This document shows positions 3,979-26,402 of a stretch of DNA of 64,000 bases, piece after piece. Below the pieces are notes generated by a model that was not told the DNA's origin, did not search any database, and saw only the letters and a list, made by a program, of their open reading frames with translations. Both the position numbers and the translations under genes were made by a program. Positions within the stretch are counted from its first letter, which is position 1. Each line of letters begins with the position of its first letter. Source of the stretch: Marsupella aquatica. Taxonomy: Eukaryota; Plantae; Marchantiophyta. Location of the stretch: NCBI GenBank assembly GCA_973895155.1, contig OZ316898.1, forward strand, positions 2,393,927-2,457,926, in the 5' to 3' direction.

Positions 3979-4150
3979 GTTTTCCAAATGCACTCCTAAC
4001 TCCAGTTACTCTCCTAGAGGCCTCACTTTAGAGCAACCTCAACCTCCGTTTTCCAAATGCACTCCCAACTCCAGTTACTCGGTGCCCCCAACCTCCGTTT
4101 TCCAAATGCAATCCTAACTCCAGTTACTCTCCTAGAGGCTTCACTTTAGA
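3979..4150. repeat. Short local triplication next to the retroelement 5' end
   Basis: TTTTCCAAATGCA(C/A)TCC(T/C)AACTCCAGTTACTC occurs three times (~3980, 4049, 4098). Confidence 0.8.
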
Positions 4151-6269: not shown

Positions 6270-9200
6270 TAAGTCAAAAGAGACCAGAATGATTCACTGC
6301 CATTCGATTTATCCCTGTATAATTTTGGGCATTTAAAAATTTGTCTCCCATTTCCTCACCATCTGTACAACTTTTGCCTCTCCCCTATACCTGCAACTCT
6401 TGCCCTCTCTTTGCAAGTCTCTTCTTCCCATCCTTGCAATAGTGAATCTCCTCCCTACCTACAACTCATGCATTGATTTCTCTTTCCACTATCATTGTAG
6501 CACTTATGCTTTGACCATCTTCCACACTGACATCACTTTTGGCTTGACATGGTGACTGTAGCAACAACACTTTTTGCAAAGATAGTACAATTGCAACCAT
6601 GTCACAACAACCCTTTTGCAAAGAGAGCACAATTGCAAATGACACATCTACAAAGACATGACCACAACAACAAATTGTGCAAAGCTGGAGGGCATTGGCT
6701 AGTTATCTTTATAAAATAGGCGTACCCAAGATATTCTCCTTTGCAGGGCCTCACGTAGTCAGAGTATTAACTGGGAACTTTTAACATGATATTGCCACTG
6801 TGGGAAAACGGGAGGAGGAAATTTGAGTCACAGAGAACCTGAATAGTTATGAAGATAGTTCACCAATTGTCCAAGAATCTTCATCGCTACAGGACCGGAC
6901 ACATCAGGACGACTCCAACATTGCACCGTCAATAGTCCAAGAATCTTCATCGCTACAGTACCGGACACATCAGGACGACTCCAACATTGCACCGTCAATA
7001 GTTGAAATCTTCAAAGATGCGTGACGACAATTATTGTCCAAGGAAACAATTCTAATGGAACTCCCAATTTACATCTGGCATTGCTGACCGAGAGGCACAA
7101 GTTAAACTCGTATCGAGAAAATGACGAAAAGGTGGAGAGCGGCGTCCTCACGCAAGCCATGTCAAGAAAGACTTTCTTCTCGTCAAAACACGATTACTTT
7201 ATGATTATGTTCTGTAGATTGATTCGTCCTCGATCCCTTCGTTTCACCCTGAAGAATTTATGGGTCTGTTGGACGTCACGCCCTCCCAAACTTCCTCAGG
7301 TCGAGCTTATCGGGATATTTCCGTTCAAGGTAATATCCGATCCACAGCTTCAGTTTAAGGTACTGTCTGATCGACAGCACATTCTGGACACTACTCTAGA
7401 CTTTTGGCTCGCAGGTCCGAAGGTCCCCCAAACGGTACCACCCGGTCGTGTCTACCCGAACATCTTCAAGCAATCGGGACTTGCTGAACAGTGAACACAC
7501 CATACAAGCGCATAGATACCCAGGGTAGACAAGGGTATCAAGGCAGTTAACTTCAATACGTACCGCCACGTTCAAACACAGTGCAAGACTGACACTCCAA
7601 TTCATTCACAGTTCATATTCCTCTACTGCAGACTTAGTGGGCATTAGCTGTCTGTATTCAAATCATCCATGGTTCCAAACTGCATGGTTCCAAAATCGGG
7701 GTGGTGTTCTTCACAGGTGTTTCTACTGATCTGCCACCTAGCATCGACCACATTTTGATTCCTCACAATCTCGTCAGCACTTCGGATTGAGTAGTTCCGA
7801 GGATCTTGAAACTCCTCCTAGCCTGCTGAAACCGATCGAGGATCAGGTAATTAAGAGGGTACTCATACCTCGCCAAGTCTTTAGTTATATATTTATGAAG
7901 TTTTCCAGACTCTGTAAACTGTCAGATAGAGGTGTAGAGTCACTAAACAAAGTCTGTGATAGTTTCTCCGTCAGCAAGTGGTGGAGACCCAGGATAAGAT
8001 CGAATTCTAGAATAGTACTCAAAACACTAAGATTTCATGTGTGGTCGATCCGTCAGAAAGTGGTTGAGCCCCAGACAGTATAAGATCGACTTCGAGAATA
8101 GTACTCAAACAATAAAATTTCATGTGTGGTCGATACCTCAGAGGGTATATATATGTACTCCATTAGCGATAAGCAATTAGTTGTGAATCGGAAGCACTTC
8201 TAACCTCAGGGAATCAGAATCCGGGGGCTCTTGGAGGATTGATGGACCTCAATGGGTGGATTATTTTGTACCTACCTGATTGCAGGTTTCAGACCCGACA
8301 CCCTCAACCTCCTGTCGCAAAGCCGTGATCGATGGAATCGATCAACGAACTGTTGGGACGGAGCGGTCAGAGTACAGCTTCCGAGATCCCTTTGGCCGCT
8401 GTTGCAAATCTACTTTGATTCACTCTAGGATCCACTCTCTGGTCGTCGAGTCTCTCAATTAGGTGGCCGTCTAACGTCGTCGAAACATGGTTAGGAATCA
8501 TTCGTCAGTGGGTGAGCTACAGTCAGTGGTTGCAAAGCATAAGTGCACACTGTCCTGAATGCGCACCATAGAAAATCGCTTTATAGTTCCACACTCCGCC
8601 TGACGTTTGGTTCACATGTTATTCGCTGAGCTGCCCTGAAGACGAATTTTGCTGCAGCTTCCAATTCCGTACATCCCCGCTTACATCCTCAGCACTTCTG
8701 GTGCAGATGCGAGGGAAGCTCTTCTTTGCTAAACCTGTATGTAGGATGAACAAAATCAGAACATTGTGGCTTTGTTCATTTGGTTGAATTCGCTAATCGG
8801 CACTTGAACTGATATGACCAAAAGTAGGAAACCATCCCGGTACCTAATCAGCGATTTGCGTCTCTTTTTCGAATGGAAACAGAGCATCCCTCAATCAGGA
8901 AATTCGGGTGCTTCTTGAGTTGTCGTGTCAGTGGTGTCAAGACGACTATGGATCTCATCCGGTAGACCGATTCTGGGCCTACGTGCAGATTTTGAATTCT
9001 TAGAGGGCCGGGCATGAGGGCAGGCGACAAGTTCTCGTCTGCATCTGAGGCCAACCATGGGTGCACTCAAATGGATTGTCTTAATTCTACTCATACTTGC
9101 GCCCATCCTAGTAGCTACAGAGAAAGTAGCCCAATTATCTTTAGTGATCATTTTCTGCCTGCTTGGCTTTTTCTTGATGCGACTCATTGAAGCCTATCGC

Positions 9201-12200
9201 CGCCGCAAAGTGAAACGGTGGAGGCTGGACGCTCGTCAGGTTAGTCGTCTACACGGTTCCCCATCTCCACTTAGTGAGGATTTCTGCGGTTTATTTGCCT
9301 GGTTATATTTCTAATCCATCTTCATCCTGTCAAACCTTGAGATTGAAGAAAACTTGTCACGAAACTTTTGTTCAGGATGTCTAAGTCTCTCTTCCAGCAT
9401 TTTATGCTACATAGATCAACTATGATAAACTATTGAAGAACAAGTGCCCCGTGTCTTCGTGGTATCTCAGGTGAATGACTCCCTTTACGAGCTTTACAAG
9501 CCTGCCGGTGTTCCAACCCTACAAGTTTTATTCTTTCACGGGCTTCCATTTGGCAACTTCTTAGACACATATTTATCGACCTGGGAAAGCGGGGACGGAT
9601 CTTGTCTTTGGCCGAAGACGTGGTTGGCGAAGGAATTCCCAGATGCTCACATCCTGGTGGTCTCTTACGGTGAAGGCCTCAGAGAAGGTTCCGCTGAAAG
9701 CTTCGACATGCGCATCATTTGCGAAAACTTGACCAGTGATCTGATCCAGGCAGACGTTGGTCAGACGGCTGATTGCCCAGTAGTCTTGGTGGGCCACTCT
9801 TTTGGGGGTCTGGTCATCAAGGATCTGTGCCTTGAGGCGCACAACACACTCATTTCCCCCACACACAATGCGAAGGTTCAGAAATTTCTTGATAACTTGA
9901 GAGGGGTATTTTACTACAGTACCCCTCATCATGGCAGTCCTCATATAGGACGAGCAGCAAGTGTCTTGAGCGGCCCCTTGTTTAAGTACTTCACAGTATT
10001 AAGTTCTGACGCTGCCCGGTTGAATTACGACTTCAATCGTTTGTGCAACTCGTACCCGAAGATGCAAATAGGAGGATTGGGGGAAGGTCTCCCTGTAAAA
10101 TGGGTAAAGATGCAGCTGCTATCATTTCCGCTGATTACTTAATGCATCTTTCTTTTGGTCAAGTGAAAAAGCACCAAACCTTGTCGTGGGTTTTGGCATG
10201 CATTTACACATTGGCACTGCGGTTACTGGACCAGCTGGAAGTGGCCGACTCTGTTATTGTGTAGAGTAGACATACTTTCACTGTTGCAATGAATGCAAAC
10301 TCGACCGGTAGCTAACGTACATATCGGTACTTTTAGTTCCCATATTCTCGAATTGATTGAGTACAAGATCCACAACTTACCGACAAAGCGAAGTTAATCT
10401 ATCGATTTCGTTGCATCAATTTGACTTGTATGTCGTGGTCGGGCAGGGCATATTCCAAGGTATTGTCATAGTACCCGAAGCATCAGCCAGAGATGGGGAG
10501 AATTTCAATCTTGAAAGCAGCGCAGACCATTTCTCCGTGTGCAGACCAGAGAAGACAACCTCAAGAAGGTTCAACGCCCTGACAAGACTCCTTGGGAACA
10601 TTTGCGACGATCTAAAGGTTGGTTAACTACAGTACGACCTTCAGCTGAAGAATCTACAGTCCTTACGTTGTCATTCGATGCAACATGTGCGGCATATCTT
10701 TGGTTCTCAATATATGACAACCTCCTTCATGTCTCCTTAATTGAAAGCTCGAAATTCACATGGGGTAGAAGATTCAGGATTGCAATATTTCTGACGAAAA
10801 CTATGTTTCAACTGTAGGATAAGAAAGCCATGGCTCAGAAGCAAGCTCTGCGACAGAATTTTCAACATCTTCCAAAGCACATGATCAACAGGGCTGGCGT
10901 TTTAGAGGAGGTTAAAAGCAGGCTTACGGAATTTACAACGCTGGGCTTCGTGGGAATGGGGGGGCTCGGGAAGACCACCCTCGCAATGGCGGTCTTTAAT
11001 GAACTGAGTCCGGCATTTGAGTACAGTTGTTTTGTCCCTGATGTGAAGTTGATAAACGGGAGTGTTGAGGAGGCGGAAGAGGTAGTGTGGAAAAAGATGC
11101 ATCACTTCGGAAGGAAGGTTGGAGACGAGGCCCGAGACGAGGTGGACTTGTATGATTTGACTGAGAAAGAAATACTCGTTGTTTTAGATGATATATCAGA
11201 TGATAAACTTTTGTCACGTCTGGTTGACGATTTCTCTCCACAAAGTCGTTTCATTGTTACTTCTCGTGATTGGACCCTTCTGAGGAGCTTGGACGATGTT
11301 TACGAGGTCCCGTTACTGGACCAGCAAAATGCCCAGAAGCTATTTCTAAGCCATGCTTGCCCAAGCCTGGCAAATTTACCCGCAAACTTGGAACCTGATA
11401 TGGTGGCCGTTGTGGCCAAGTGCGGCGGGCTGCCTCTAACGCTTGAAGTTCTTGGAAGTTATCTAAAACTGAAAAAGGATGACAAGTTTTGGAAGCAAAC
11501 TTTGCAAGCTTTAGAGAAGGCCGAGGCTATCCAAGACCTTGAGAAGAGGTTGTGGGCAAAGCTGAGAATCAGCTACGAAGGACTTGACGAGGTAGAGAAG
11601 CAAATATTCCTCGATGCAACAACTTTCTTCAGCCAAAGTTTGTATGGGTATATATCTTTGCGCGAGGCAAAAGCGGCTTGGAGGAAAGCTTACAGCACTG
11701 AGTATGAGACCCTACAATGGCAAAACTTGGTTGACAGGTCTCTTGTTTACCACGTGGAAGATGATGAGAGGATCAGGGTGCATGGCCAACTTCTAAGTCT
11801 GGGCCGAAAGATAGCCTTAGCCTCGGAGTCGATTGAAAATGGCAAGTGTAGGGTATGGGATGGGAAAATGGCTTGCAAGCAACTAATGGAGGACGCGGAA
11901 AATCAGGTGAGCTCGTCCGTGATCAATTCAAGCAAATTTCTTTGTTGAGGAGGCGCATAAACTTTAAACTTTGGATATGCAAAGCATATGACATTGCAGA
12001 CCGGTGCATTGATGAGGATTGAACTAAATGGTGTGGTGGCGATGATTTTGTAGGATATTCATGCCTTGCGGTTGTCCATCGCCTGCGATAGTCAAGAACG
12101 TGGGGCAGTTCACATTTCAGGCCATGCTCTTCCCAAACTGAAGAAATTGCAGTACCTTGAAGTGGATGGCCCGGTTCTCCTTGATGGAGTTGAGGACGAT

Positions 12201-15200
12201 ACGTCCTTCCCCAGTAAACTCGTCTTGCTCAAATGCATTGCACATCTTGGTACTTTTGACCTTGCCCTTCAAGACCGCCTAGTGGTTTTGCATGTATCGG
12301 GTGTGGTGGCCCTTCCCAGCTCTATTGGGCAACTATCAGCTCTTAGAATCTTTATCGGTAACGGCATACAAGCTGTACCGGATGAATTCGGTGATTTGTC
12401 ACAGTTGGAATATCTTGAGTTCAGAAACTGTGCATTTTTCCAGAGCTTGCCTGGTACATTTGGCAAACTATCACAGTTGAAGTCCCTAAAATTCAGGTGC
12501 TGCCACAGGCTCCAGTTGCCCGAGACATTTGGCGGTCTTTCCAACTTGAAGGATCTTGAACTCAAATCATGTTGGGGGTTGCGTTCCCTTCCTCAATCCC
12601 TCGGTAATCTATCCGCGTTAAATCATCTTGTCATCAGTCATTGTAACGAATTGGTCGCGCTACCTAATTCAATTGGAAACCTGTCTGCGTTGAAGCATCT
12701 AAACATCAGTCATTGTGAGGGATTGCATTCCTTGCCAGAGTCCTTTCGAAAGTTATCTGCAATTAAATATCTGAGTGACTGTGAGTTTGAACTACACCCG
12801 AATTCCTTCGAGAAACTCTCCACGTTAAGGCATCTGGAGTTGCAAGATTGCGGGAGTTTAATCTCCAGGATTGCCTTTGGTCAACTCACGCAGTTACAAT
12901 ACTTGGAAATCAGTGGAAAAGGCACTCTTATTGAGATGGAGAAGCTTCCCGAGTCTCTTGCACAACTGACGGCTCTTAATCATCTCGTTCTTGAGTGTGT
13001 TTCGATAAGGAGCATTCCTGACTTCATCAGGAGTATGCAGTCGTTACACACTTTGGAACTCAAAACTCTACCGTACATCAAGGAGTTGCCTGCTTGGCTG
13101 GGGGATACTGGTACGACCCCTCTAGCTCTGTCATGCAAGACGTTTCAGGTACAGGATGGGCGTTTTTCTTTGATTGGTGGGATGGCCGGAATTGTAACTG
13201 CAGAGTGGCAGATCAAGAAAATCCATGAAATTGCAATGGAGATGGTCGAGAAATTGGACTATGAAGGAGCTCTGGCATATTTGTGTCCCGCGAACCTTGG
13301 AGTGCTGGAAGCCAAGTTTGCGAGATTCTTGTTGCAAGAAAGGGGCATAGCAAGACGTTTCACGGGAGATCTCCAGAGAGCGTTGGAAGATCTCACTGCC
13401 GCATTAGAAGTATCATGTGCTGAAGATGACGGGCATGAGTATATGTATGACTGTTGGAAGCACCGAGGCTATGTGAACTTCTTGTTGGGGGATCTGGATG
13501 GTGCAAGAAGGGACGGTGCAATGGCTTCAACGCTGTTGCCTCACTACAGTTGCTATGCAATCGTAAGCTCACCAAGTCTAGGTGAAAGATCAGTAGCATA
13601 TATGGATTTCAGACTTGTTCGTAGGAGAAAATATGTCCACGAGCGTTGGGAATTAATGGACTTATCGCATTCTCAATTGATGGACAAGGTGCGGGTATCA
13701 GACTTCCACGGAGCCCTCGCATGTTGGAATGTCACTGATCCAAGTGCATACGAGCCAGCTCGAAGGCTTTTTTTCTTGCAAGAACGTGGGATTTTGAAGC
13801 GATTGTATGGAGATCTATGTGGAGCTCTGGCAGATCTTGGTGCTGCATTGGAAATCTATGGTGAGGCAGATGGTGTAGAGGGTTCAGAGACGCCAGATGT
13901 GTTTATGAAGTACTGCGCATATAATTGCCTGAAGCACAGGGGCTTCGTGAAATTTTTGTTGGAGGATTTGGATGGCGCAAAGCAAGATGGTGCGATGGCC
14001 TGGAAGCTCATAAGCTTCAAGTGTTTTTGGCCACGTGAAAGCGTGATCTCACCAAATCTAGGCGAAGAATTAATAACCTATATGCATTTCAGACTCCATC
14101 CAGTAATGCATCTTCCCAAGCAAATGAAATTAAAAAATTTATTTCATATTGACATGATGGAGAAGGTGAGGAAGTCTGATTTCTTGGGGGCCCTCACAGT
14201 CTGGGAAGATCTGGATGCCAGGATATCGGGCTATTTTGATCGGATTTTGTTCCTGCAAGAAAGAGGGGTCTTAAAGCGATTAGCGGGGGATCTCCAGGGA
14301 GCTTTGGATGACCTGACTGCCGCCGCGGAAATCCTGGCCGGCAAGGGAGATGACAAGTGCTGTGAGCAGCGTTGTTGGGACCAGTACATGTATAATTGTC
14401 GGAAGCACCTGGGCTACGTGAAGTTCTTGTTGGGGGATCTGGGTGGCGCCCAAGATGATGGTGCAAAAGCCTTAAAGCTTCTGTGGGAGAACTACAACCT
14501 CAATCACTTTAATTATAAAATCTCACCAACTTTAGGTGAAGAATCAGTCACATACTTGAAGTACACGCTGATCAGAAAAAGAGACATCCAAGTGCAGCAC
14601 GAGCTAATGATGTCAATACATTCTCAAGTGATGGAGAAGGTGACAATGTCAGACTTCCCGGGGGCCTTGGCAATCTGGTGTGATTTGGCTGATAGGGTAT
14701 CACCCTATTATGATCGAGTTTTCTTCTTGCAAGAAAAGGGGATATTGAAGCGAATGGCAGGCGACCTTCCCGGGGCGCTGGAAGACCTGACAGCAGCCTT
14801 GGAAATTTGGAACTTGGAAATACGGGAGGGTCATTATGAGCGTTTCAAGCATCGGGGCTATGTGAAGTACTTAATGGGGGATGAAGATGGAGCACGAAGT
14901 GATGCAGAAAGATGCGTGGCGATGGAGCCTGTAGTGGATGGGTGTAAATGCTTGGGAGGGTTGCCCGTGGCATTTTTGGAATTCAGACTGAAGGGAAGGA
15001 GAGCATGTGAGGAAGAATTCAAGATGTCAGCACATACTGAAGTTATGGAGAAGGTAAAGAAGAAGGACTTCCTGGGGGGCCTGGCAGTTTGGGACGATTT
15101 CGGCGCCAGCGTGGGAGGCTATTTTCTTTGGGATTTCTTCTTGCGCGAAAGAGGAATTCTGAGGCGAATGGTGGGCGATCTTCCGGGGGCGTTGCAAGAC

Positions 15201-15450
15201 CTTACAGCAGCCTTGGAACTTGAGGGCGAGGACTACGATTGCTCCAAGCACCGGGCGTACGTGAAGTTCTTACTGGGGGACATAGACGGAGCGCGAGAAG
15301 ATGCCACCAAATGCTTACGCAAACGGGAGCTCTACTCCAATTACTCAAGATCTTATCATGGAGACAAAAACTGTTTGGGAGAATTTCGTTTACCTTTTCT
15401 GGAGTTTGAGTTGTAAATAGCGCTTCCACTTCTTCTCCCCATGAATTTTA
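6270..15450 (+). repeat. Tandem segmental duplication unit 1 (paralogous to ~16660-26590), including ~2.8 kb upstream of the NLR gene
   Basis: Colinear similarity from AAAAGAGACCAGAATGATTC (6277, versus 16669) through both genes to the 3' flank. Confidence 0.9.
9057..15416 (+). CDS. NLR-like receptor copy 1: hydrophobic N-terminus, alpha/beta-hydrolase, NB-ARC, LRR, five TPR-like modules (~1812 aa)
   Basis: Exons 9057-9239, 9471-10103, 10447-10617, 10818-11906 and 12054-15416, all GT-AG, phase 0 and conserved in copy 2. Hydrolase motifs LFFHGL, WPKTWL, GHSFGG, STPHHGS, IVPEASA, ADHFSVCRP. NB-ARC motifs GMGGLGKTT, LVVLDD, SRFIVTSRD, CGGLPL, VHG. LRRs of the LPxSFGxLxxL type. Linkage of exon 1 is the least certain part. 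Confidence 0.85.
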
Positions 15451-17142: not shown

Positions 17143-17945
17143 TTACGGACCCCACTAGAGGTCCCTTCCAAAATTCCTGGCACCACATCGTGCCACGTCA
17201 ACAACAACCGCAACAAACAAGACTCGTCGGTTTTGTGAATCAAACTTATAGTTTTCATTCGTGTTTGTGTCAATTTGGGTGTAAATTTTGGGACGCCGTA
17301 CCGTAAAAAGAAAAGTAAAAACATTGGAAATGCAAAGAGCAAGACGGTTAAAACTGTCACTATGTAACCGTTTTAGTTACATTTTCAATTTTAAAACTTA
17401 AATTCAAAGATTTATAAAAAGTATGTTTCATATAATAAATAATGACTAATAACTAAATTGATAACTTCCTTGTTAAACCGCAACTCCTGGTATGTAAGGA
17501 CCTCTCGTATTGTACGGCCATTAATGCTAGGAAGAGCACATAGAAACCCAGGATCAGGGAGGAGGAATGACTGGAATCTTGAAAGTTCATTCTCAAAACA
17601 AAAAAATATCCAGTCGTAGATCTCATTGAGATCTTTTTTTGCACCCTAGATTGCCTTCTAACATGGATGAATAAGATTTCTAAAGGCATTACAAAATGGA
17701 CGACAAAGATCGTAAAATCAACAAAATCGACAGCTATGAAGGCTTGGATTTGTTTAATTTTTCATTTGAAAACTATTGACCCATTTGCAAAACTGATAGA
17801 ACCCATCCATAGATCTATTTGAGATCTTTCTTTTGAGCCATAGATTGGCCATTATGATGGACTGACTAGATTTCCGGAAATAAGAAATAAAGACTGCTCA
17901 TATTGACTCTTCGGGCTAATAAATTAGCCAAGGGGTCCACTAACT
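17143..17945. mobile_element. ~800-bp AT-rich insertion specific to unit 2, MITE-like / non-autonomous DNA transposon
   Basis: Unit 1 reads GTCAGAGTATTAA-CTGGGAACTTTT contiguously (~6758-6782), whereas unit 2 is interrupted at this point. The insert starts TTACGGACCCC and ends GGGGTCCACTAA (imperfect inverted ends) in a TAA/TTA context. Confidence 0.55.
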
Positions 17946-19981
17946 AATTAGTAACTTTTATCATCGTATTGCCTAATGAGGGAAAATCGGAAGACGAAAT
18001 TAGAATCGCAGAGCAGAACCTGAATAGTTATGACCTTTGCTATAGTTCACCAATTGTCAGAGAATTTTCATCGCTACAGTTCCGGTGCACACATCAGGTC
18101 GACTCCATCTGCACCGTCAATCGTTAAAATCTTCAAAGATAATCACAATTATTTTCTAAGGGAACAATTTTAATATGGAACCCCCAATTTACATCTGGCA
18201 TTGCTGACCGAGAGCCACAGGTTAAATTGGTATCAAGACGACCTGACGAAAAGGTCGAGAGCGGCGTCCTCACGCAAGCCATGTCAAGAAATTCGTTTCT
18301 CTTTAAAACACGATTACTTTATGATTGTAGATAGATTCGCCCTCCATCCTTTCGTTTCACCCTGAAGACTTTATGGGTCTATTTGACATCACGCCCTCCC
18401 AAACCTTCTCAGGTCGATCTCATCTGCTTACTTCAGTTCAAGAGTACGATCGACAGCACATCCTGGACACTATTCTAGATTTTGGCTCGCAGGTCCGATC
18501 CTCTGAACGGAGCCAACCCGGGTGTTGTCTACCGGAATATCGTCAAGCAATCGGGAACTGCTGTACAGTGAACATATCGTAGAAGCGCACAGGAGATCAT
18601 AATGGATATCAACAGCAATTAACGTCAACCCTACCGCCACCCTCAAACACAGTTCAATACTGACACTCCAACTCATTCACAGTTCATTTTCCTCTCCTTC
18701 AGACTTAGCGGGAATCAGCTGGCTGTACGTACGCAAATCATCCATGGTTCCAAACACCATGGTGGTGTTCTTCACAGGTGTTTCAGTACTGATCTGCCAT
18801 CAATGCGAACCTGGCGTCGGCCACCTTTTGATTCCTCACAATCTCGTCAGCAATTCGGGTTAATAGTTCCGAGGATCTTGAGAGTACTCCTAGCCTGCTG
18901 AAACTGATCGAGATCAGGTAAGACGATACTCGTACCATACCTTGCCAAGTCTTTAGTGGTAGATTTTGAAGTTTTCCAGACTCTGCGTACTGTCAGATAG
19001 AGGTCAGCATCCTGTCTGGAAAACTTGCATACTGTCAGATAGAGGATAATTTCATGTGTGGTGGATACCTCAGAGGGTATGTATATGTACTCGATTAGCG
19101 ATAAGCACTTGTGAATCGGAAGCACTTCTTACCGCAGGGAATTAGAATCCGGGTGCTGTTGGAGGATTGATGGACCTCAAGGGGTGGATTATATTCTACA
19201 TGATTGCAGGTTTCAGACCTGCAACGACCCTATAGGCCAGGCGACGATACCCTCAGTCTCCTCTGGATGGCAAGCCATGATGGAATCGATCAACCAACTA
19301 CTGGGACGGAACGGTCAGAGCACAGCTTCCGGAATCCCTTCGATCAACTGCTGGTCCAAACCTTCTTTGATTCACTCTAATATCCATTGTCTAGTCGTCG
19401 AGTCTCTCATTTAGGCCCCCGTCTAGGTCAGCGAATATGGTTAAGATGTCGTTCGTCGGTGGGTGGGCTAAGTCAGTGGTGGCAAGCACAAGAGCTGTGC
19501 ACACTGTCCTGAATGCGCACCACAGAAAATCGCTTTTCTAGTGCCTCACTCCGCCTGACCTTTGGTTCACATGTTACTCGCTGAGCTGCCCTTAAGACGA
19601 ACTTCCTTCAGTTCCAATTCCTTACATCCTCGCTTACATCCTCAGCACTTCTGGTGCAGATGCGAGGAGGCAATTCTTTGCTAAACCTGTTTGCAGGATG
19701 GACAAAGCAGAACTTCGTGCCATTATTCGGTCGGTTGGATTCGCTAATTTTGAACTGATATGATCAAAAGTATGAGACCAATTTCCGTACCCGATCAGCG
19801 ATTTGCGTCTTTCTTTCGAATGGAAACAGAGCATCCTTCAATCAGGGATTTCGGATGCTTCTTGAGATGTCGTGTCGCTAGTGACACGACGACCATTCTG
19901 GGACTAGGTGCAAATTGTCACCTCTAGATGCTCAGGGCATGACGGCAGGCGAAAAGAGCTCGTCTTCTTCTGAGGCTAACG

Positions 19982-22900
19982 ATGGGTGCACTCAAATGGA
20001 TTTTCTTAATTCTGGTCATATTTGCGCCGATTCTAGTAGCTACAGAGAAAGTAGCCCATTTATCTTTTGTGGTCATTTGCTGCCTGCTTGGCTTTTTCTC
20101 GATGCGACTCATTGAAGCCTATCGCCGCCGCAGCAAAGTGAAACAGTGGAGGCTGGACGCCCGTCAGGTTAGTCGTCTACACGGTTCCTCATCTCCACGT
20201 TAGTGAAATTTTCTGCAGTTTTTTTGCCTGGTTATTTTTCTAGTCCATCCTCAACCTGTCAAACCTTGAGATTGAAAGAAACTTGTAACAAACTTTTTTT
20301 CAGGATGTCTAAGTCTGTCTTCCAGCATTCTATCTAACAGAGATCAAGTATGATAAACTATTGAACAACAAGTGCCCCCGTCTTCGTGGTATCTCAGCTG
20401 AATGACTCCCTTTACGAGCTTCACAAGCCTGCCGGTGTTCCAACCCTACAAGTTTTATTCTTTCACGGGCTTCCATTTGGCGACTTCTTAGACACACATT
20501 TATCGACCTGGGAAAGCGGGGACGGATCTTGTCTTTGGCCGAAGACGTGGTTGGCGAAGGAATTTCCAGATGCTCGCATCCTGGTGGTCTCTTACGGTGA
20601 AGGCCTCAGAGAAGGTTCCGCTGAAAGCTTCGACATGCGCATCATTTGCGAAAACTTGACCAGTGATCTGATCCAGGCAGACGTTGGTCAGACGGCTGAT
20701 TGCCCAGTCGTCTTGGTGGGCCACTCTTTTGGGGGTCTGGTCATCAAAGATCTGTGCCTTGAGGCGCACAACACACTCATTTCCCCTACACACAATGCGA
20801 AGGTTCAGAAATTTCTTGATAACTTGAGAGGGGTATTTTACTACAGTACCCCTCATCACGGCAGTCCTCATATAGGACGAGCAGCAAGTGTCTTGAGTGG
20901 CCCCTTGTTCAAGTACTTCACAGTATTAAGTACTGACGCTGCCCGGTTGAATTACGACTTCAATCGTTTGTGCAACTCGTACCCTAGGTTGCAAATAGCA
21001 GGATTGGGGGAACGGCTCCCTGTGAAATGGGTAAGATGCAGCTGCTATCATGTCCGCTTCTGATTACCCATTGTTTCTTTCTTTTAGTCATTCAAGTGAA
21101 AGAGCTCCAACTGCTGCCATGGATTTTGGCAGTAATTTGCGCGTTGGCACTGTGGTTGCTGGATGACCTTCACCTTTTCCGACTCTGCTTTTCTGCAGAG
21201 TAGACATATTTTAACTCTTGTGATGAATTCTGACCCGACAGGTAGCTAACGTACAGTCGGTACCTTTAGTTGTCTCATTCTCGAAGTGATTGGGTTTACT
21301 GGCGAAGCCAAGTTAATTGTTGGTTATTTCGTTGCATCAAATTGAAATTGTTGTTGTAGTCGAGCAGGGCATATTTCAAGGCATTGTCATAGTACCGGAA
21401 GCATCGGCCAGAGATGGGGAGAATTTCAATCTTGAAAGCAGCGCAGACCATTTCTCCGTGTGCAGACCAGAGAAGACAACCTCAAGAAGGTTCAACGCCC
21501 TGACAAGACTCCTTGGGAACATTTGCGACGATCTAAAGGTTGGTTAACTACAGTACGACCTTCAGCTGAAGTATCTACAGTCCTCACGTTGTCATTCGAT
21601 GCAACATGTGCGGCATATCTTTGGTTCTCAATATATGACAACCTCCTTCATGTCTCCTTAATTGAAAGCTCGAAATTCACATGGGGTAGAAGAATTCAGG
21701 ATTGCAATATTTCTGACGAAAATTATGTTTCAACTGTAGGATAAGAAAGCCATGGCTCAGAAGCAAGCTCTGCGACAGAATTTTCAACATCTTCCAAAGC
21801 ACATGATCAATACGGCTGGTGTTTTAGAGGAGGTTAAAAGCAGGCTTACGAAATTTACAACGCTGGGCTTTGTCGGGATGGGGGGCCTCGGGAAGACCAC
21901 TCTCGCAATGGCGGTCTTTAATGAACTGAGTCCGGCATTTGAGTACAGTTGTTTTGTCCCTGATATGAAGTTGATAAAAGGGAGTGTTGAGGAGGCGAAA
22001 GAGGAAGTGTGGAAAAAGATGCATCACTTCGGAAGGAAGGTTGGAGACAAAGATGAGTTGTATGATCTGACTGGGAAAGAACTACTGCTTGTTCTAGATA
22101 ATATATCAGATCATCGTGATATTATACTTTTGTCACATCTGGTTGATCTTTCCTCTCCACAAAGTCGTTTCATTATTACGTCTCGTGATAGGATCCTTCT
22201 GAGGAGCTTGGACGATATTTACGAGGTCCCGTTACTGGACCAGCGAAATGCCCAGAAGCTATTTCTAAGCCATGCTTGCCCAAGCCAGGTAAATTTACCA
22301 GCAAACTTGGAACGTGATATGGTGACCGTAGTGGCGAAGTGTGGCGGCCTGCCTCTAACGCTTGAAGTTCTCGGAAGTTACCTAAAACTGAAGAGGGATG
22401 GCAAGTTTTGGAAGCAAACTTTTCAGGCTTTGGAGGAGGCCGAAGCTATCGAAGACCTCGAGAAGAGGTTGTGGGCAAAGCTGAGAATCAGTTATGATGG
22501 ACTTCATGAGGTAGAGCAGCAAATGTTCCTCGATGCAACAACTTTCTTCAGCCAAAGTTTGAATGGGTATATATCTTTGCGCGAGGCAAAGGCGGCTTGG
22601 AGGAAAGCTTACAGGACTGAGTATGAGACCCTACGATGGCAAAACTTGGTGGACAGGTCTCTTGTTTATGATGTGGAAGACGATGAGAGTATCCGGGTGC
22701 ATGACCAACTTCTAAGTCTGGGACGAAAGATAGCCTTAGCCTCGGGGTCTAGTGAAAATGGCAAGTGGAGGCTATGGGATGAGAAAATGGTTTGCGAGCA
22801 ACTAATGGAGGACGCGGAAAATCAGGTGAGCTCGTCAGTGATCAACCAAATTTCTTTATTGAGGAGGCGCATAAACTTTAAAGTTTGGACATTCAAAGCA

Positions 22901-25900
22901 TATGACATTGCAGCCCGGTGCATTGATGACGATTGAACTAAATAGTGAGGTGGCGTTGATTTTGTAGGATATTCATGCCTTGCGGTTGTCCATCGACAGC
23001 GATGGTCAAGAACGTGGGACAATTCACATTTCAGGACATGCTCTTCCCAAACTGAAGAAGTTGCAGTACCTTGAAGTTGATGGCCCGGTTTTCCTTGATG
23101 GAGTCGAGGAAGATACGTCGTTCCCCAGTAAACTCGTTTTGCTCAAATGCATTGGACGTCTCGATACTTTTGACCTTGCCCTTCAAGACCGTCTGGTGGT
23201 TTTGTTTCTATCGGGTGTGGAGGTCCTTCCCAGCTCTATTGGACAATTATCAGCTCTTAGAATCTTTATCGGTGAAGACTTAAAAAGTGTACCGGATGAA
23301 TTCGGCGATTTGTCACAGTTGGAATATCTTGAGTTCAGACACTGTGCCTTTCTCGAGAGCTTGCCTGGTACATTTGGCAAACTATCACAGTTGGAGTCCC
23401 TAAAATTCAGATTCTGCCACAGGCTCCAGTTGCCTGAGACATTTGGCGGTCTTTCCAACTTGAAGGATCTTGAACTCAAATCTTGTTGGGGGCTGCGTTC
23501 CCTTCCTCAATCCTTCGGTAATCTATCCGCATTAGATCATCTTGTGCTTAGTCGTTGTGACGAATTGGTCGCTCTACCTAATTCATTTGGAAACCTATCT
23601 GCGTTGCAGCATCTAAACATCGGTCAATGTGAGGAATTGCATTCCTTGCCTGACTCCTTTCGAAACTTATCTGCATTAGAACATCTCAAGTTGAGTGACT
23701 GCGAGTTTGAAGTTCCCCCGAATTCCTTAGGGAAACTCTCCACGTTGAGGCATCTGGAGTTGCAAGACTGTGGGAGTTTAATCTCTATGATTACTTTTGG
23801 CCAACTCACGGAGTTACAATACTTGGAAATCAGTGGAAAAGGCAGTCTTATTGTGATGGAGAGCCTGCCTGAGTCTCTTGCACAACTGACGGCTCTTACT
23901 CATCTCGTTCTTGACTGTGTTTCTATAAAGAGCGTTCCCGACTTCATCAGAAGTATGCAGTCTTTGCATACTTTGGAGCTCAAAACACTACCGTACATCA
24001 AAGGGTTGCCTGCCTGGTTGGGGGATACTGGTGCGGCCCCTCTAGCTCTATCATGCAAAAGGTTTCAGGTACAGGACGGGCGTTTCTCTTTGATTGGTGG
24101 GACAGCCGGAACTGTAACTGCGAAGTGGCAGATCGAAAAGATCCATGTAATTGCGATGAAGAAGGTCGAGGAATTAGACTATGAGGGAGCTCTTGCGTAT
24201 TTGTGTCCCGCGAACCTTGGAGTGCTGGAAGCCAAGTTTGAGAGATTCTTGTTGCAAGAAAGGGGCATAGCAAGACGTTTCACAGGAGATCTCCAGGGAG
24301 CCTTGAAAGACCTCACTGCCGCATTGGAAGTATCATGTGATGAAGATGACGGGCATGATTATATGTATGACTGTTGGAAGCACCGAGGCTATGTGAAATT
24401 CTTGTTGGGGGATCTGGATGGTGCAAAAATGGACGGTGCAATGGCTTCAACGCTGTTGCCTCAGTACAATTGCTATGGAATTGTAAGCTCACCAAGTCTA
24501 GGTGAAAAATCAGTAGCATACATGGATTTTAGACTTGTTAGAACGGGAGACTACTTCAACCAGCTTTGGGGACTAATGGATTTATCGCATTCTCAAGTGA
24601 TGGACAAGGTGCGGTTATCGGACTTCCACGGAGCCATGGCATGTTGGAATGTCACTGATGCAAGTGCATATAAGCCGGACCTGAGGCTTTTTTTCTTGCA
24701 AGAAAGTGGGATTTTGAAGCGATTGGGTGGAGATCTATGTGGAGCTCTGCAAGATCTTAGTACTGCATTGGAAATCTATGAGACAGACCGTCGACGGTTT
24801 TCAGATCCACAAGACATGAAGTACTGCGCATATAACTGCCTGAAGCACAGGGGCTTCGTGAAATTTTTGTTGGGAGATTTGGATGGCGCAAAGCAAGATG
24901 GTGCGACGGCCTGGAAGCTCATAAGCTGTAAGTGTTATGATCCAAGTAACAGGCTGATCTCACCAAATCTAGGCGAAGAATTAATAACCTATATGCATTT
25001 CAGACTCCATCCAAGAATACATCTTCCGAAGCAAATGAAATTAAAAACGTTATTTCATAATGACGTGATGGAGAAGGTGAGAAACTCAGAATTCTTGGGG
25101 GCCCTCACAATCTGGGAAGATCTTGATGACAGGACATCTGGCTATTTTGATCGGATTTTGTTCCTGCAAGAAAGAGGGGTCTTAAAGCGACTAGCGGGGG
25201 ATCTCCAGGGAGCTTCGGATGACCTGACTGCAGCTGTGGAAGTCCTGGCCGGCGAGGGAGATGACAAGTGCTGTAAGCAGCGTTGTTGGGACCAGTACAT
25301 GTATAATTGTCGGAAGCACCTGGGCTACGTAAACTTCTTGTTGGGGAATCTGGGTCGCGCCCAAGATGATGGTGCAAAGGCCTTAAAGCTTCTGTGGGAG
25401 AACTACAACCTCGATTACTCTACTTATAAGATCTCACCAAGTTTAGGTGAAGAATCAGTCACATATTTGAATTTCACGCTGATTGGAAAGAGAGATGTCG
25501 AAGTGCAACAAGAGCTAATGGCGTCAAGACATTCTCAAGTGATGGATAAGGTGATGATGTCAGACTTCCTGGGGGCCCTGCCAATCTGGTGTGATTTGGC
25601 TGGCAGGGTGTCACCCTATTACGATCGAGTTTTCTTCTTGCAAGAAAAGGGGATATTGAGGCGAATGGCGGGCGACCTTCCCGGGACGTTGGAAGACCTG
25701 ACAGCAGCCTTGGAAATATTGAACTTCGAAACATGGCCGGGTCATTATGAGCTTTTCAAACATCGGGGCTATGTCAAGTACTTAATGGGGGATGAAGATG
25801 GGGCACGAAGTGATGCAGAAAGATGCGTGGCAATGAAGCCTGTAGTGGGTGGGCGTGAATGTTTGGGAGGATTTCCCGTGGCATTTTTGGACTTCGGACT

Positions 25901-26402
25901 GAAGGGAAGGAAAGCATGTGAGCAAAAATTCAAGATCTCAGCACATAAGCAAGTCAAAGAGAAGGTAAAGAAGAAGGACTTCCTTGGGGCCCTTGCAGTT
26001 TGGGACCATTTCTGCGCCAGCACGGTAGGCTATTATCGTCGGGATTTCTTCTTTCGCGAAAGAGGAATTTTGAGTCGAATGGCGGGCAATCTTCCGGGGG
26101 CGTTGAGAGACCTTACAGCAGCTTTGGAAATTGGCAGAGGTGACTATGATTGCTTCAAGCACCGGGCGTACGTCAAGTTCTTACTGGGGGACAAAGATGG
26201 AGCGCGAGAAGATGCCAAAAAATGCTTGGGCTTCGTCAGAGAGACCCTCTATATCACTTACGAAAGCAATCCGGAGGTCAAACGCCTTCGATTTACTCGG
26301 TACTTAGACTGCGACGACTCTTTGGGAGGATTTCGTCGGTACTTACACTACGACGACTCTTGGGGAGAAGTTAGTTTAGCTTTTCTGGAGTTTGAGCTTT
26401 AA
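19982..26402 (+). CDS. NLR-like receptor copy 2: hydrophobic N-terminus, alpha/beta-hydrolase, NB-ARC, LRR, five TPR-like modules (~1836 aa)
   Basis: Exons 19982-20167, 20398-21030, 21368-21538, 21740-22825 and 22968-26402 (GT-AG, phase 0). Same motifs as copy 1 except Walker B LLVLDN and MHD-equivalent VHD. Confidence 0.85.

What the first reader, a model, noticed from the sequence alone, without database searches (positions are those of the whole stretch)
9057..26402. Tandem NLR pair with five-part architecture: TM, lipase-like hydrolase, NB-ARC, LRR, TPR-like array
Seen: both paralogs encode an alpha/beta-hydrolase (nucleophile GHSFGG, candidate acid in GE.LP, His in ADH), a full NB-ARC, a dozen or so LRRs and then ~730 aa of TPR-like repeats in the same exon as the LRRs. 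Established: hydrolase-NB-LRR genes are known from bryophytes, and hydrolase-NTPase-TPR architectures from fungi and bacteria. Inference: two different superstructure-forming sensor arrays (LRR and TPR) in series behind one NB-ARC, with an apparently catalytically intact lipase-like effector, is unusual and may define a new NLR subclass.
Basis: partly seen in the sequence, partly recalled or inferred. Interest (0 to 1): 0.82.

Follow-up and report, generated by a model that had tools for sequence, protein, structure and literature searches.

The report
Liverwort hydrolase-NLR pair with five TPR domains
Two tandem copies of a liverwort immune-receptor gene carry the known bryophyte lipase-like "hydrolase-NLR" layout, plus a membrane anchor at the front and five copies of a small TPR domain at the end; that domain turns out to be a shared but apparently undescribed C-terminal piece of many liverwort NLRs.

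Summary
Two head-to-tail paralogs (88.6% nt identity) each encode, over five canonically spliced in-frame exons:
- a hydrophobic N-terminus;
- a SERAC1/DUF676-like alpha/beta-hydrolase (GHSFGG, two conserved Glu, His);
- NB-ARC plus a winged-helix domain;
- about 13 LRRs;
- about 740 aa of TPR, in the same exon as the LRRs.

- Hydrolase-NLRs are a known bryophyte class.
- The C-terminal part is not one long TPR solenoid. It is five copies of a discrete ~140-aa unit: three TPRs plus an ordered tail (AlphaFold pLDDT 91).
- The same unit sits in one copy at the very C-terminus of other liverwort NLRs. These are LRR-type in Calypogeia fissa and ARM-type in Calypogeia, Riccia and Marchantia, including MpNBS-LRR15.
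- Among 57 hydrolase-domain proteins sampled (nearly all NLRs), only eight carry it, all from C. fissa. None of 23 from Marchantia, Riccia or Ceratodon does.
- A five-unit array also exists, unannotated, at one C. fissa locus, and its units match the window's one to one. The amplification is therefore old.
- The groove helices are the most conserved part, which argues for a conserved ligand rather than a second variable pathogen sensor.

Verdict: a new variant of a known kind. The scan had noted the five-fold module (s1-763519) and the NB-ARC motif changes (s1-763541) on this same stretch.

The parts
8116..15316 (+). Duplication unit, copy A (promoter region to near the stop codon)
   Evidence: blastn against 19048-26227: 88.6% identity over 7275 columns; identity per segment
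9057..9273 (+). Copy A exon 1: hydrophobic N-terminus (two hydrophobic runs, then RRRKVKRW). Ends in phase 1 at donor A|GTGAGG
   Evidence: KD19 maximum 2.5. A homologous N-terminus is annotated on C. fissa P0002
9445..10103 (+). Copy A exon 2: alpha/beta-hydrolase core (FFHGL, GHSFGG nucleophile elbow, STPHHG, GLGE)
   Evidence: Pfam Abhydrolase_6 1.9e-6, with weak DUF676, LCAT and PGAP1 hits; hmmalign to 56 hydrolase-NLR homologs
10447..10617 (+). Copy A exon 3: end of the hydrolase (IVIVPEASAR, SSADHFSVCRP with the conserved His) and linker helix
   Evidence: 100% amino-acid identity between A and B
10818..11906 (+). Copy A exon 4: NB-ARC and winged-helix domain. P-loop GMGGLGKTT, Walker B VLDD, GLPL. 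MHD position reads VHG
   Evidence: Pfam NB-ARC 4e-26 and WHD_ROQ1 1.5e-5
12054..13205 (+). Copy A exon 5, first part: about 13 LRRs and the post-LRR cap motif (LPAWLGDTG...FQVQDGRFSL)
   Evidence: Pfam LRR_14 3.8e-37. Cap motif shared with Marchantia hydrolase-NLRs, which end soon after it
13206..15416 (+). Copy A exon 5, second part: five TPR units and the stop codon. M1 13206-13616, M2 13617-14096, M3 14097-14570, M4 14571-14990, M5 14991-15413
   Evidence: AF2 of M4: pLDDT 91, six helices plus tail. Foldseek to CTPR3 and peptide-binding TPRs, prob 1.0. VIA Z 12-14
19048..26227 (+). Duplication unit, copy B
19982..20202 (+). Copy B exon 1: hydrophobic N-terminus. Ends in phase 2, one base longer at its 3' end than in copy A
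   Evidence: KD19 maximum 2.4
20373..21030 (+). Copy B exon 2: hydrolase core (GHSFGG, GLGE). One base shorter at its 5' end than in A, which restores the frame across intron 1
21368..21538 (+). Copy B exon 3: end of the hydrolase (VPEASAR, ADH)
21740..22825 (+). Copy B exon 4: NB-ARC and winged-helix domain. Walker B reads VLDN; MHD position reads VHD
22968..24119 (+). Copy B exon 5, first part: LRRs and post-LRR cap
24120..26402 (+). Copy B exon 5, second part: five TPR units and the stop codon. M1 24120-24536, M2 24537-25007, M3 25008-25481, M4 25482-25901, M5 25902-26399. The M5 tail is lengthened by a 39-bp tandem duplication at 26290-26367

Best explanation
Proposed identity. These are two recently duplicated, intact genes for a membrane-tethered alpha/beta-hydrolase NLR (the bryophyte 'Hyd-NLR' class) from a leafy-liverwort-like genome. 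The nearest public genome is Calypogeia fissa.

Shown here:
- One coding unit of five exons.
- A SERAC1/DUF676-like serine hydrolase that keeps the family's conserved Ser, two Glu and His.
- A plant-type NB-ARC plus winged-helix switch.
- About 13 LRRs with the same post-LRR cap as Marchantia Hyd-NLRs.
- Then, where Marchantia proteins stop, five tandem copies of a ~140-aa domain built of three TPRs and an ordered tail ending in a conserved hydrophobic-x-hydrophobic-x-Leu motif.
- This domain is a liverwort NLR C-terminal domain, found singly behind LRR or ARM arrays elsewhere. It was amplified to five before this clade's genes diverged.

Inferred:
- The receptor sits at a membrane with its body in the cytosol.
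- The LRRs, and possibly the variable faces of the TPR units, sense a pathogen-derived cue.
- NB-ARC nucleotide exchange drives oligomerisation.
- The clustered hydrolase domains then act as the executioner. Marchantia Hyd N-terminal domains alone cause HR-like cell death in Nicotiana benthamiana (PMC11218826).
- The TPR units most likely bind a conserved short peptide in their groove. This could be their own or a neighbouring unit's tail, or a conserved host partner. They would then serve regulation or assembly (autoinhibitory latch or rigid arm) rather than act as a second hypervariable sensor.
For: Gene model:
- Canonical GT-AG junctions, all in frame.
- In copy B, a +1 change at the end of exon 1 is compensated by a -1 change at the start of exon 2, so the frame across intron 1 is kept with a different phase.
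- The C. fissa homolog P0002 is annotated as one protein running from the hydrophobic N-terminus through hydrolase, NB-ARC and LRR to TPR.
- dN/dS is 0.31 for the hydrolase, 0 for exon 3, 0.34 for NB-ARC, 0.36 for the LRRs and 0.30-0.85 for the TPR units.

Class:
- Domain hits.
- The window's exons align with 56 Hyd-NLR homologs. The state S-E-E-H is kept in 33 of them and in both window copies.
- The NB-ARC tree places (P0002,(A,B)) with 99% support inside a 99%-supported clade that also holds Marchantia and Riccia Hyd-NLRs.
- The post-LRR cap motif is shared with Marchantia proteins, which end about 30 aa after it.

TPR unit:
- Five units per copy, 42-51% identical among units.
- AF2 of one unit: pLDDT 91, pTM 0.87, six helices plus a confident tail.
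- Foldseek prob 1.0 to CTPR3, PcrH and Hsp90-peptide TPR domains; VIA Z 12-14.
- A profile search of 1.84 billion proteins finds whole-unit, C-terminal matches. All those that carry a name are liverwort proteins, and the long ones are NLRs.
- Single-unit proteins end with, or within two residues of, the conserved Leu.
- C. fissa locus L001 holds five units that match the window's units one to one.

Conserved groove: between A and B, helices A2 and A3 differ at 9% and 6% of positions. Helix A1, the loop and the tail differ at 25-39%.
Against: - There is no transcript evidence for this genome; splicing is inferred.
The catalytic acid cannot be assigned between the two conserved Glu.
- The canonical DUF676 Asp position is not conserved.
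- The membrane anchor rests on hydropathy only. Exon 1 has dN/dS 0.93 over 72 codons.
- The tail-in-groove idea rests on confidence values and secondary structure of one model. I could not inspect coordinates.
- The five-unit model has low confidence for how units pack (pLDDT 62, pTM 0.28).
- Units M2 and M5 have dN/dS 0.78 and 0.85, so some diversification, and hence a sensor role, is not excluded.
- Copy A has Gly at the MHD acidic position and copy B has Asn at the second Walker B Asp. One or both copies may therefore have altered switch behaviour.
- No function has been shown for any protein carrying this TPR unit.
Confidence: 0.7

Rival explanations
1. The TPR array is a true second sensor, or an integrated decoy: bait domains copied from a host TPR protein that pathogen effectors target, with five baits in series widening recognition.
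For: - TPR domains are ligand sensors in other STAND NTPases (review PMC10586772).
- dN/dS is raised in M2 (0.78) and M5 (0.85).
- Helix A1, the loops and the tails vary between the paralogs.
- The fold class is that of peptide-binding co-chaperone TPR domains.
Against: - The groove helices A2 and A3 are the most conserved parts.
- The nearest relatives of the unit are liverwort NLR C-termini, short liverwort proteins or fragments whose context I did not examine, and unnamed metagenome fragments. Beyond these there are only generic bacterial TPR proteins at 23-30% identity.
- One such short protein is M. polymorpha OAE30715.1 (275 aa, annotated TPR repeat protein). I did not check whether it is a stand-alone gene, and that would bear on this rival.
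- The unit sits at the extreme C-terminus of NLRs of different repeat types. This looks like a family-wide functional part rather than a recently captured bait.
Confidence: 0.15
2. The three-TPR units dock the C-terminal EEVD tails of HSP90 or HSP70, building the chaperone link into the receptor. In flowering plants that link is supplied by SGT1 and RAR1.
For: The structural neighbours include many EEVD-binding three-TPR domains:
- designed CTPR390 with Hsp90 peptide;
- RPAP3;
- Sti1/Hop;
- CHIP/STUB1;
- SGT2;
- FKBP38.
Against: - Fold similarity is generic for three-TPR domains. Sequence identity is 10-18% and the Z values are within the range quoted for helical repeats.
- The conserved groove residues (E, G, R in helix A2; Y, K, H, R in A3) do not obviously match the Lys/Asn/Asn/Lys/Arg carboxylate clamp. 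That clamp pattern is from my own knowledge and was not tested structurally.
- The sequence profile hits only Tom70 weakly, outside its clamp domain.
Confidence: 0.08
3. The genes are decaying or mis-joined: the exons are separate genes or pseudogene pieces, as the C. fissa annotation of a stand-alone 626-aa TPR protein (P0001) might suggest.
For: - C. fissa P0001 and P0003 are annotated as short proteins.
- At the C. fissa loci the first unit (L001) and the fourth unit (L002) are interrupted in frame.
- Both window copies carry one unusual NB-ARC motif residue each.
- There are no transcript data.
Against: - In the window, both copies keep all five exons open with conserved splice sites, including a compensated frame change.
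- LRR and TPR are one uninterrupted frame of more than 1100 codons in both copies.
- dN/dS is well below 1 in the catalytic and switch domains.
- Upstream of P0001, locus L001 holds the matching hydrolase, NB-ARC and LRR exons. P0001 is therefore a truncated annotation, not a stand-alone gene.
Confidence: 0.05

Closest known systems
Bryophyte alpha/beta-hydrolase NLRs (Hyd-NLR / HNL), e.g. Marchantia polymorpha proteins auto-named 'protein SERAC1' (P0252, P0261); PMC11218826, PMC7145615
   Same: - N-terminal SERAC1/DUF676-like hydrolase with the same conserved Ser, Glu, Glu and His columns.
- NB-ARC of the same clade.
- LRRs of the same type.
- The same post-LRR cap motif.
   Different: - The Marchantia, Riccia and Ceratodon members sampled end shortly after the LRR cap and have no TPR unit (0 of 23).
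- The window genes add five units.
- The window genes also add a hydrophobic N-terminal exon, which only 4 of 57 sampled hydrolase proteins have.
Liverwort NB-ARC-ARM NLRs ending in the same unit, e.g. M. polymorpha MpNBS-LRR15 (BBN11091.1 / PTQ32806.1, P0228), Riccia fluitans KAL2636033.1, C. fissa P0014
   Same: One copy of the same ~120-140-aa three-TPR unit with the tail, placed at the extreme C-terminus.
   Different: - ARM/HEAT repeats instead of LRRs.
- A single unit.
- Mostly no hydrolase (C. fissa P0019 and P0020 have one).
- The NB-ARC is too divergent to enter the Hyd-NLR NB-ARC set.
TNP family (TIR-NB-ARC-TPR), conserved across green plants (PMC9806590, PMC10586772)
   Same: A plant NB-ARC followed by TPRs.
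   Different: - TNPs have an N-terminal TIR and no LRR.
- They form a separate, ancient NB-ARC lineage.
- Homology of the TPR parts was not tested here.
- The window genes have no TIR.
Fungal NLRs with an N-terminal lipase or alpha/beta-hydrolase (SesB-like, patatin) and TPR, ANK or WD40 repeats (PMC4986451, PMC9815663)
   Same: The same logic: a hydrolase effector, a STAND NTPase and a TPR-type repeat region.
   Different: - No LRR.
- NACHT or a fungal NB-ARC.
- TPRs form the main repeat array.
- Independent origin (inference; not tested here).
C-JID / post-LRR domain of flowering-plant TIR-NLRs (RPP1, Roq1; PMC10586772)
   Same: An extra domain placed directly after the LRRs.
   Different: - C-JID is a beta jelly-roll that contacts effectors.
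- This unit is an all-helical three-TPR domain, and it is repeated five times.
Three-TPR peptide-binding domains (designed CTPR3, Hop/Sti1 TPR1/2A/2B, CHIP, SGT2, RPAP3, PP5, PcrH)
   Same: The fold:
- Foldseek prob 1.0, TM 0.57-0.85 by target length, rmsd 2.0-2.6 A over about 105 columns for the best rows.
- VIA Z 12-14.
   Different: - 10-18% sequence identity.
- The usual capping helix is replaced by a 23-45-aa ordered tail with a conserved end.
- No evident carboxylate-clamp signature.

Membership tests
Plant NLR (NB-ARC STAND NTPase) | NB-ARC domain with P-loop, Walker B, RNBS motifs and GLPL, followed by a winged-helix domain | tested here: met
   - Pfam NB-ARC 4e-26 (92 bits, cut-off 23.5) and WHD_ROQ1 1.5e-5.
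- GMGGLGKTT, VLDD (A) or VLDN (B), TSRD and GGLPL.
Plant NLR (NB-ARC STAND NTPase) | Acidic residue in the MHD-type motif, and both Walker B aspartates | tested here: inconclusive
   - Copy A reads VHG where 10 of 10 located homologs have D or E.
- Copy B reads LDN where 93 of 104 have DD and 8 have DN.
- Each copy is canonical at the other site.
- The consequence is unknown.
Bryophyte Hyd-NLR | N-terminal alpha/beta-hydrolase homologous to that of Marchantia Hyd-NLRs, fused to NB-ARC-LRR | tested here: met
   - A hydrolase profile built from C. fissa proteins hits Marchantia Hyd-NLRs at 1e-41 to 1e-64 (most near 1e-62), and the window exons align to it.
- The NB-ARC tree puts the window genes in a 99%-supported clade with them.
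Serine alpha/beta-hydrolase (DUF676 / SERAC1 / PGAP1-like lipases) | Nucleophile Ser in G-x-S-x-G | tested here: met
   - GHSFGG in both copies.
- Ser in 38 of 56 homologs, Cys in 10 and Asp in 6.
Serine alpha/beta-hydrolase (DUF676 / SERAC1 / PGAP1-like lipases) | Catalytic His | tested here: met
   ADH in exon 3 of both copies; His in 47 of 55 homologs. The assignment is by alignment only.
Serine alpha/beta-hydrolase (DUF676 / SERAC1 / PGAP1-like lipases) | Catalytic acid placed next to the His in the fold | tested here: inconclusive
   - Two conserved Glu are present: GLGE (48 of 56) and VPEASAR (52 of 55).
- Choosing between them needs a fold of the spliced domain. That joined step was left out.
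- The Pfam DUF676 score for the window exon is below its cut-off (14.9 against 20.3). Homologs P0004, P0080 and P0146 pass it.
TPR (tetratricopeptide repeat) domain | 34-residue helix-turn-helix repeats packed as a right-handed array | tested here: met
   - Pfam TPR_9 3.2e-9 and TPR_2 1.2e-8.
- AF2 model of six helices, pLDDT 91.
- Foldseek to consensus CTPR3: prob 1.0, rmsd 2.2 A.
- VIA Z 14.1.
TNP (TIR-NB-ARC-TPR) | N-terminal TIR domain and TPRs directly after the NB-ARC, with no LRR | tested here: not met
   No TIR hit. The N-terminus is a hydrolase, and about 13 LRRs lie between the NB-ARC and the TPRs.
NLR with integrated decoy (NLR-ID) | The extra domain is homologous to a non-NLR host protein that effectors target | tested here: inconclusive
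   - In a profile search of 1.84 billion proteins, the long named proteins with whole-unit matches are liverwort NLRs, and the other hits are generic bacterial TPR proteins.
- Several short liverwort proteins (116-386 aa) also match. Most look like partial annotations, but M. polymorpha OAE30715.1 (275 aa, 'TPR repeat protein') was not examined and could be stand-alone.
- Only the best 150 of 3889 hits were listed, so a host family is not excluded.
Carboxylate-clamp TPR co-chaperone domains | Clamp residues (Lys/Asn/Asn/Lys/Arg) in helices A1-A3 that bind EEVD-COOH | not tested
   Only fold similarity was obtained. Coordinates could not be inspected. The conserved A-helix residues listed do not obviously fit.

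The most novel reading that the evidence does not exclude
The ~140-aa unit is an undescribed, liverwort-restricted NLR C-terminal domain: three TPRs whose groove binds a conserved tail ending in hydrophobic-x-hydrophobic-x-Leu at the free C-terminus. It would work as a self-binding latch or assembly element shared by LRR-type and ARM-type NLRs. In this clade it was multiplied to five and added to a membrane-anchored hydrolase-NLR, giving a receptor with a multi-latch or chain-forming arm. That would be a regulatory principle not known from flowering-plant NLRs.
Probability: 0.25. Interest if true: 0.7.

Novelty: new variant of a known kind. Interest (0 to 1): 0.5.

Why it matters
Work on plant NLRs is built almost wholly on flowering plants. 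Bryophyte hydrolase-NLRs are known, but how they act is open.

- These genes show that the Hyd-NLR chassis can carry further parts: a membrane anchor in front and a series of small peptide-binding-type domains behind the LRRs.
- The analysis also brings out a conserved C-terminal TPR domain that links otherwise different liverwort NLR classes, including a named Marchantia gene (MpNBS-LRR15). That gene can be studied in a tractable model.
- If the domain regulates the receptor, it would be a lineage-specific counterpart of post-LRR domains such as C-JID.
- If the hydrolase needs its Ser and His, the pair offers a compact test of an enzymatic, non-TIR, non-CC executioner at a membrane.

Tried and rejected
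- **Word search with one unit.** A search using a single terminal unit of P0004 found only three C. fissa proteins. It was too insensitive, so I replaced it with the profile search.
- **PDB sequence searches.**
  - The unit profile gave only weak Tom70 TPR matches (best E 7.5e-4).
  - The hydrolase exon gave one insignificant hit (E 0.65).
  - Neither gave a catalytic-residue mapping.
- **Five-unit AlphaFold model.** With a five-sequence alignment, pLDDT was 62 and pTM 0.28. It is usable for helix content only, not for how the units pack.
- **ESM Atlas.** It returned only generic bacterial TPR clusters.
- **Diversifying selection on the LRR beta-face.** Solvent-face positions differ at 24% against 15% elsewhere (Fisher p = 0.19, nine repeats located).
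- **Source genome.**
  - No database protein exceeds about 62% identity to the window's translations.
  - C. fissa loci are 68-80% identical in DNA over exons.
  - So the window is either another species or an unannotated paralogous locus. This is unresolved.
- **MHD regex.** It located the motif in only 10 homologs.
- **Rejected reading: one continuous TPR solenoid.** The unit boundaries, the ordered tails and the single-unit proteins argue against it.
- **Rejected reading: TNP membership.** There is no TIR.
- **Rejected reading: stand-alone TPR gene.** The matching upstream exons are present at L001.
- **Complex prediction** was not used, because no claim here rests on two proteins binding.


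Full report
**What is there**

The stretch 9057-26402 holds two head-to-tail copies of one gene on the + strand. The copies align over 7275 columns at 88.6% identity (8116-15316 against 19048-26227). The long open frames are listed.

Reading the junctions gives five exons per copy, all with GT-AG borders and all in frame.
- Copy A: 9057-9273, 9445-10103, 10447-10617, 10818-11906, 12054-15416. The summed exon codons give 1832 aa.
- Copy B: 19982-20202, 20373-21030, 21368-21538, 21740-22825, 22968-26402. The summed exon codons give 1856 aa.

The lengths above are sums of exon codons. The spliced protein was never built, searched or folded.

**Domain content**

Pfam, run on copy A exon by exon, gives:
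- Abhydrolase_6 at 1.9e-6, above its cut-off, with weak DUF676, LCAT and PGAP1 hits, for exon 2;
- NB-ARC at 4e-26 and WHD_ROQ1 at 1.5e-5 for exon 4;
- LRR_14 at 3.8e-37, plus TPR_9 at 3.2e-9 and TPR_2 at 1.2e-8, for exon 5.

Copy B's exons were not scanned. Per segment their proteins are 76-100% identical to copy A's, apart from module 5 at 68%.

So are GMGGLGKTT and GGLPL. I count about 13 LRRs by eye.

Exon 1 has two hydrophobic runs followed by RRRKVKRW. The Kyte-Doolittle 19-residue maxima are 2.5 in A and 2.4 in B.

The LRRs and the TPR part share one uninterrupted frame of more than 1100 codons in each copy.

**Is it one gene?**

There are no transcript data. Four lines of indirect evidence agree.
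- Splice sites and phases are conserved between the copies.
- Copy B has one extra base at the end of exon 1 and one base fewer at the start of exon 2. Intron 1 is therefore phase 1 in A and phase 2 in B, yet both read through. Such compensation is expected only if exons 1 and 2 are translated together.
- The Calypogeia fissa homolog P0002 (1574 aa) is annotated as one protein with the same order of parts: hydrophobic N-terminus, hydrolase, NB-ARC, LRR, TPR.
- dN/dS between the copies is 0.31 for the hydrolase, 0 for exon 3, 0.34 for NB-ARC and 0.36 for the LRRs, so both copies are under constraint.

**The chassis is a known class**

Hydrolase-NLRs (Hyd-NLR) are established in bryophytes (PMC7145615, PMC11218826, PMC12512272). 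Two Marchantia hydrolase N-terminal domains trigger HR-like cell death and ion leakage in Nicotiana benthamiana (PMC11218826).

A profile search starting from five C. fissa homologs recovered many such proteins from C. fissa, Marchantia polymorpha, M. paleacea, Riccia fluitans, R. sorocarpa and the moss Ceratodon purpureus.

Aligned to a hydrolase profile, 56 homologs show conserved residues:
- Ser in 38 (Cys in 10, Asp in 6);
- Glu of 'GLGE' in 48;
- Glu of 'VPEASAR' in 52 of 55;
- His in 47 of 55.

The combined state S-E-E-H is found in 33 homologs and in both window copies. Which Glu is the catalytic acid I cannot say without a fold of the spliced domain.

In an NB-ARC tree the window copies pair with each other (98%) and then with P0002 (99%). 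That group lies inside a 99%-supported clade that also holds the Marchantia and Riccia Hyd-NLRs.

**The C-terminal part**

It consists of five units per copy (coordinates). The units are 42-51% identical to one another and share a clear signature.

- AlphaFold on all five units together gave only moderate confidence (pLDDT 62), but the model is entirely helical with six to seven helices per unit.
- One unit (A-M4), modelled with a 40-sequence alignment, gave pLDDT 91 and pTM 0.87. It has six helices, that is three TPR hairpins, then a 23-residue tail whose last ten residues have mean pLDDT 97.
- Foldseek matches consensus CTPR3, PcrH and Hsp90-peptide-binding TPR domains at probability 1.0 and rmsd 2.0-2.6 A.
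- The independent aligner gives Z 12-14 to the same class. By the tool's own note these values are ordinary for helical repeats, so they show the fold and not a function.

'TPR-like' is therefore right. The object is five discrete three-TPR domains, not one solenoid.

**Where else the unit occurs**

A profile of the ten window units was scored against 1.84 billion representative proteins. Most of the 3889 hits are generic multi-TPR bacterial proteins that match only the central part.

Hits that match the whole unit, once, at the very C-terminus are liverwort NLRs wherever a name is available:
- C. fissa NB-ARC-LRR proteins, with or without a hydrolase;
- NB-ARC-ARM proteins of C. fissa, Riccia fluitans, R. 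sorocarpa, Marchantia paleacea and M. polymorpha (MpNBS-LRR15, BBN11091.1).

Several short liverwort proteins also match. One of them, M. polymorpha OAE30715.1 (275 aa), I did not examine.

In the single-unit NLRs the protein ends with, or within two residues of, the conserved Leu of the tail.

A local census of 57 hydrolase-domain proteins gave these counts:

| Group | With the unit | Details |
|---|---|---|
| C. fissa, LRR-type | 6 | P0002 (3 units annotated), P0004 and P0080 (2 each), P0095, P0146 and P0231 (1 each) |
| C. fissa, ARM-type | 2 | P0019, P0020 |
| Marchantia, Riccia, Ceratodon | 0 of 23 | |

Marchantia Hyd-NLRs share the post-LRR cap motif and stop about 30 residues after it, exactly where the window proteins go on into unit 1.

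On the NB-ARC tree the unit-bearing LRR-type proteins fall in two separate clades. At least four gains or losses are needed.

**Age of the five-fold array**

At C. fissa locus L001, upstream of the annotated 626-aa 'TPR protein' P0001, lie unannotated matches to exons 2, 3 and 4 and to the LRRs.
- The locus carries five units.
- Their best matches are the window units of the same rank: 63, 61, 60, 60 and 53% identity, against 35-58% for other ranks. For unit 5, window unit 4 aligns at slightly higher identity (58%) but over less of its length and with a weaker E-value.
- Unit 1 there is interrupted in frame, which explains the truncated annotation.

Locus L002 (P0002) has four units, the fourth interrupted.

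The amplification therefore predates the split of these genes.

No database protein is more than about 62% identical to the window's translations. DNA identity to the C. fissa loci is 68-80% over exons. The window comes from a related species or from an unannotated paralogous locus; I could not tell which.

**What the unit is likely to do**

Between the two window copies, differences are distributed unevenly:

| Part of the unit | Positions that differ between A and B |
|---|---|
| Helix A2 (groove) | 9% |
| Helix A3 (groove) | 6% |
| Helix A1 | 30% |
| Loop between TPR2 and TPR3 | 39% |
| Tail | 25% |

The same helices are also the most conserved among units. A surface that recognises changing pathogen molecules would be expected to vary most; here it varies least.

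Three observations point to a conserved, probably endogenous peptide ligand, with the unit's own or the neighbouring unit's tail as the simplest candidate:
- the conserved tail;
- its confident placement in the model;
- the fact that single-unit proteins end at, or within two residues of, the conserved Leu.

This step is inference, because I could not inspect the coordinates.

The whole-unit dN/dS values of 0.78 (M2) and 0.85 (M5) leave room for some diversification outside the groove. In the LRRs, solvent-face positions differ more than the rest (24% against 15%), but not significantly (p = 0.19).

**Proposed mechanism**

- Shown: the parts, their order, their conservation, the fold of the unit and its distribution.
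- Established elsewhere: NB-ARC NLRs switch on by nucleotide exchange and oligomerise, and Marchantia hydrolase N-terminal domains suffice for cell death in N. benthamiana (PMC11218826).
- Inferred: the hydrophobic exon, followed by a basic cluster, tethers the receptor to a membrane with the body in the cytosol. Activation clusters the Ser-His-Glu hydrolase domains at that membrane, and they act as the executioner. The TPR units regulate or scaffold the receptor (latch or rigid arm).

Rivals, in order of my odds, are an integrated decoy or second sensor, a built-in HSP90/HSP70 docking site, and decaying or mis-joined genes.

**Literature check**

Reviews state that non-flowering plant NLRs can carry ANK, TPR or ARM repeats instead of LRRs (PMC10586772). 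They also describe TIR-NB-ARC-TPR (TNP) and CC-NB-ARM classes (PMC12512272).

In the held library I found no description of LRRs followed by TPR domains in one plant NLR. I also found none of a conserved C-terminal TPR domain in liverwort NLRs and no nuclear-genome NLR study of Calypogeia. Absence from this library does not prove absence from the literature.

**Verdict**

This is a new variant of a known kind: a Hyd-NLR subfamily, so far seen only in the Calypogeia lineage, that adds a membrane anchor and a five-fold array of a liverwort NLR C-terminal three-TPR domain. The more general point is the domain itself, which is shared across liverwort NLR classes and apparently unremarked.

Earlier notes of this scan on the same stretch agree with what I found. 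They are the five-fold module (s1-763519) and the motif changes in the two NB-ARC domains (s1-763541). A further note (s1-763473) reports a similar TM-hydrolase-NLR elsewhere in the genome.

Noticed in passing
window 11100-11110 (copy A Walker B VLDD) and 11780-11800 (VHG); copy B about 22010-22030 (VLDN) and about 22700-22720 (VHD): Each paralog departs from the family consensus at one NB-ARC switch motif. Copy A has Gly where homologs have Asp or Glu in the MHD-type motif (10 of 10 located). Copy B has Asn at the second Walker B Asp (D in 93 and N in 8 of 104). This is the subject of the scan's note s1-763541. Coordinates are approximate.
   Followed up: partly
window 26290-26367: A 39-bp tandem duplication (2 copies, 87% match) inside the tail of copy B's last TPR unit adds 13 residues (RYLDCDDSLGGF / RYLHYDDSWGEV). 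This accounts for part of the 25 extra residues in copy B's last unit.
   Followed up: partly
window 9057-10816 against 19982-21739: Divergence between the copies is mosaic. Synonymous divergence is 0.08-0.11 in exons 1-3 and intron 3 is 98.5% identical. In contrast dS is 0.18-0.25 in the NB-ARC, LRR and most TPR units, and intron 2 is 77% identical. This suggests gene conversion of the 5' part after duplication.
   Followed up: no
window 30515-33238 (-) and 34240-34776 (-): A 907-aa open frame encodes a PPR protein with E, E+ and DYW deaminase domains (DYW 4.5e-35). Upstream on the same strand, a 178-aa frame has a weak SSB match (9e-6). Another reader flagged a possible SSB-PPR-DYW fusion (s1-763465). 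I confirmed only the domain hits.
   Followed up: partly
window 589-1191: Tandem repeat array with an 83-bp unit (about 6 copies, 83% match; also read as 165-bp and 248-bp periods), followed by a 43-bp repeat.
   Followed up: no
window 2001-4000: A 2-kb stretch with unusually high G+C (0.60 against about 0.45 around it) and a very strong A-over-T skew (0.47). It holds long open frames on both strands without Pfam hits. Probably low-complexity or satellite-like sequence.
   Followed up: no
window 41628-42506 and L002:18396-19650: Two blocks downstream of the gene pair match sequence just downstream of the C. fissa homolog P0002 at 77% and 68% identity. This is either conserved synteny or a shared repeat element.
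   Followed up: no
L001:5928-11878 (C. fissa CBCUJL010000003.1, reversed 8697686-8719566): The annotated 626-aa 'TPR protein' P0001 is the 3' part of a complete five-part hydrolase-NLR gene. Its upstream exons are not annotated and its first TPR unit is interrupted in frame near 9942-9968. An exon-1-like stretch lies on the opposite strand at 4672-4866.
   Followed up: partly
C. fissa proteins P0019, P0020: Two C. fissa NLRs combine the hydrolase N-terminus with ARM repeats and one terminal TPR unit (hydrolase-NB-ARC-ARM-TPR). I did not find this string described either.
   Followed up: no
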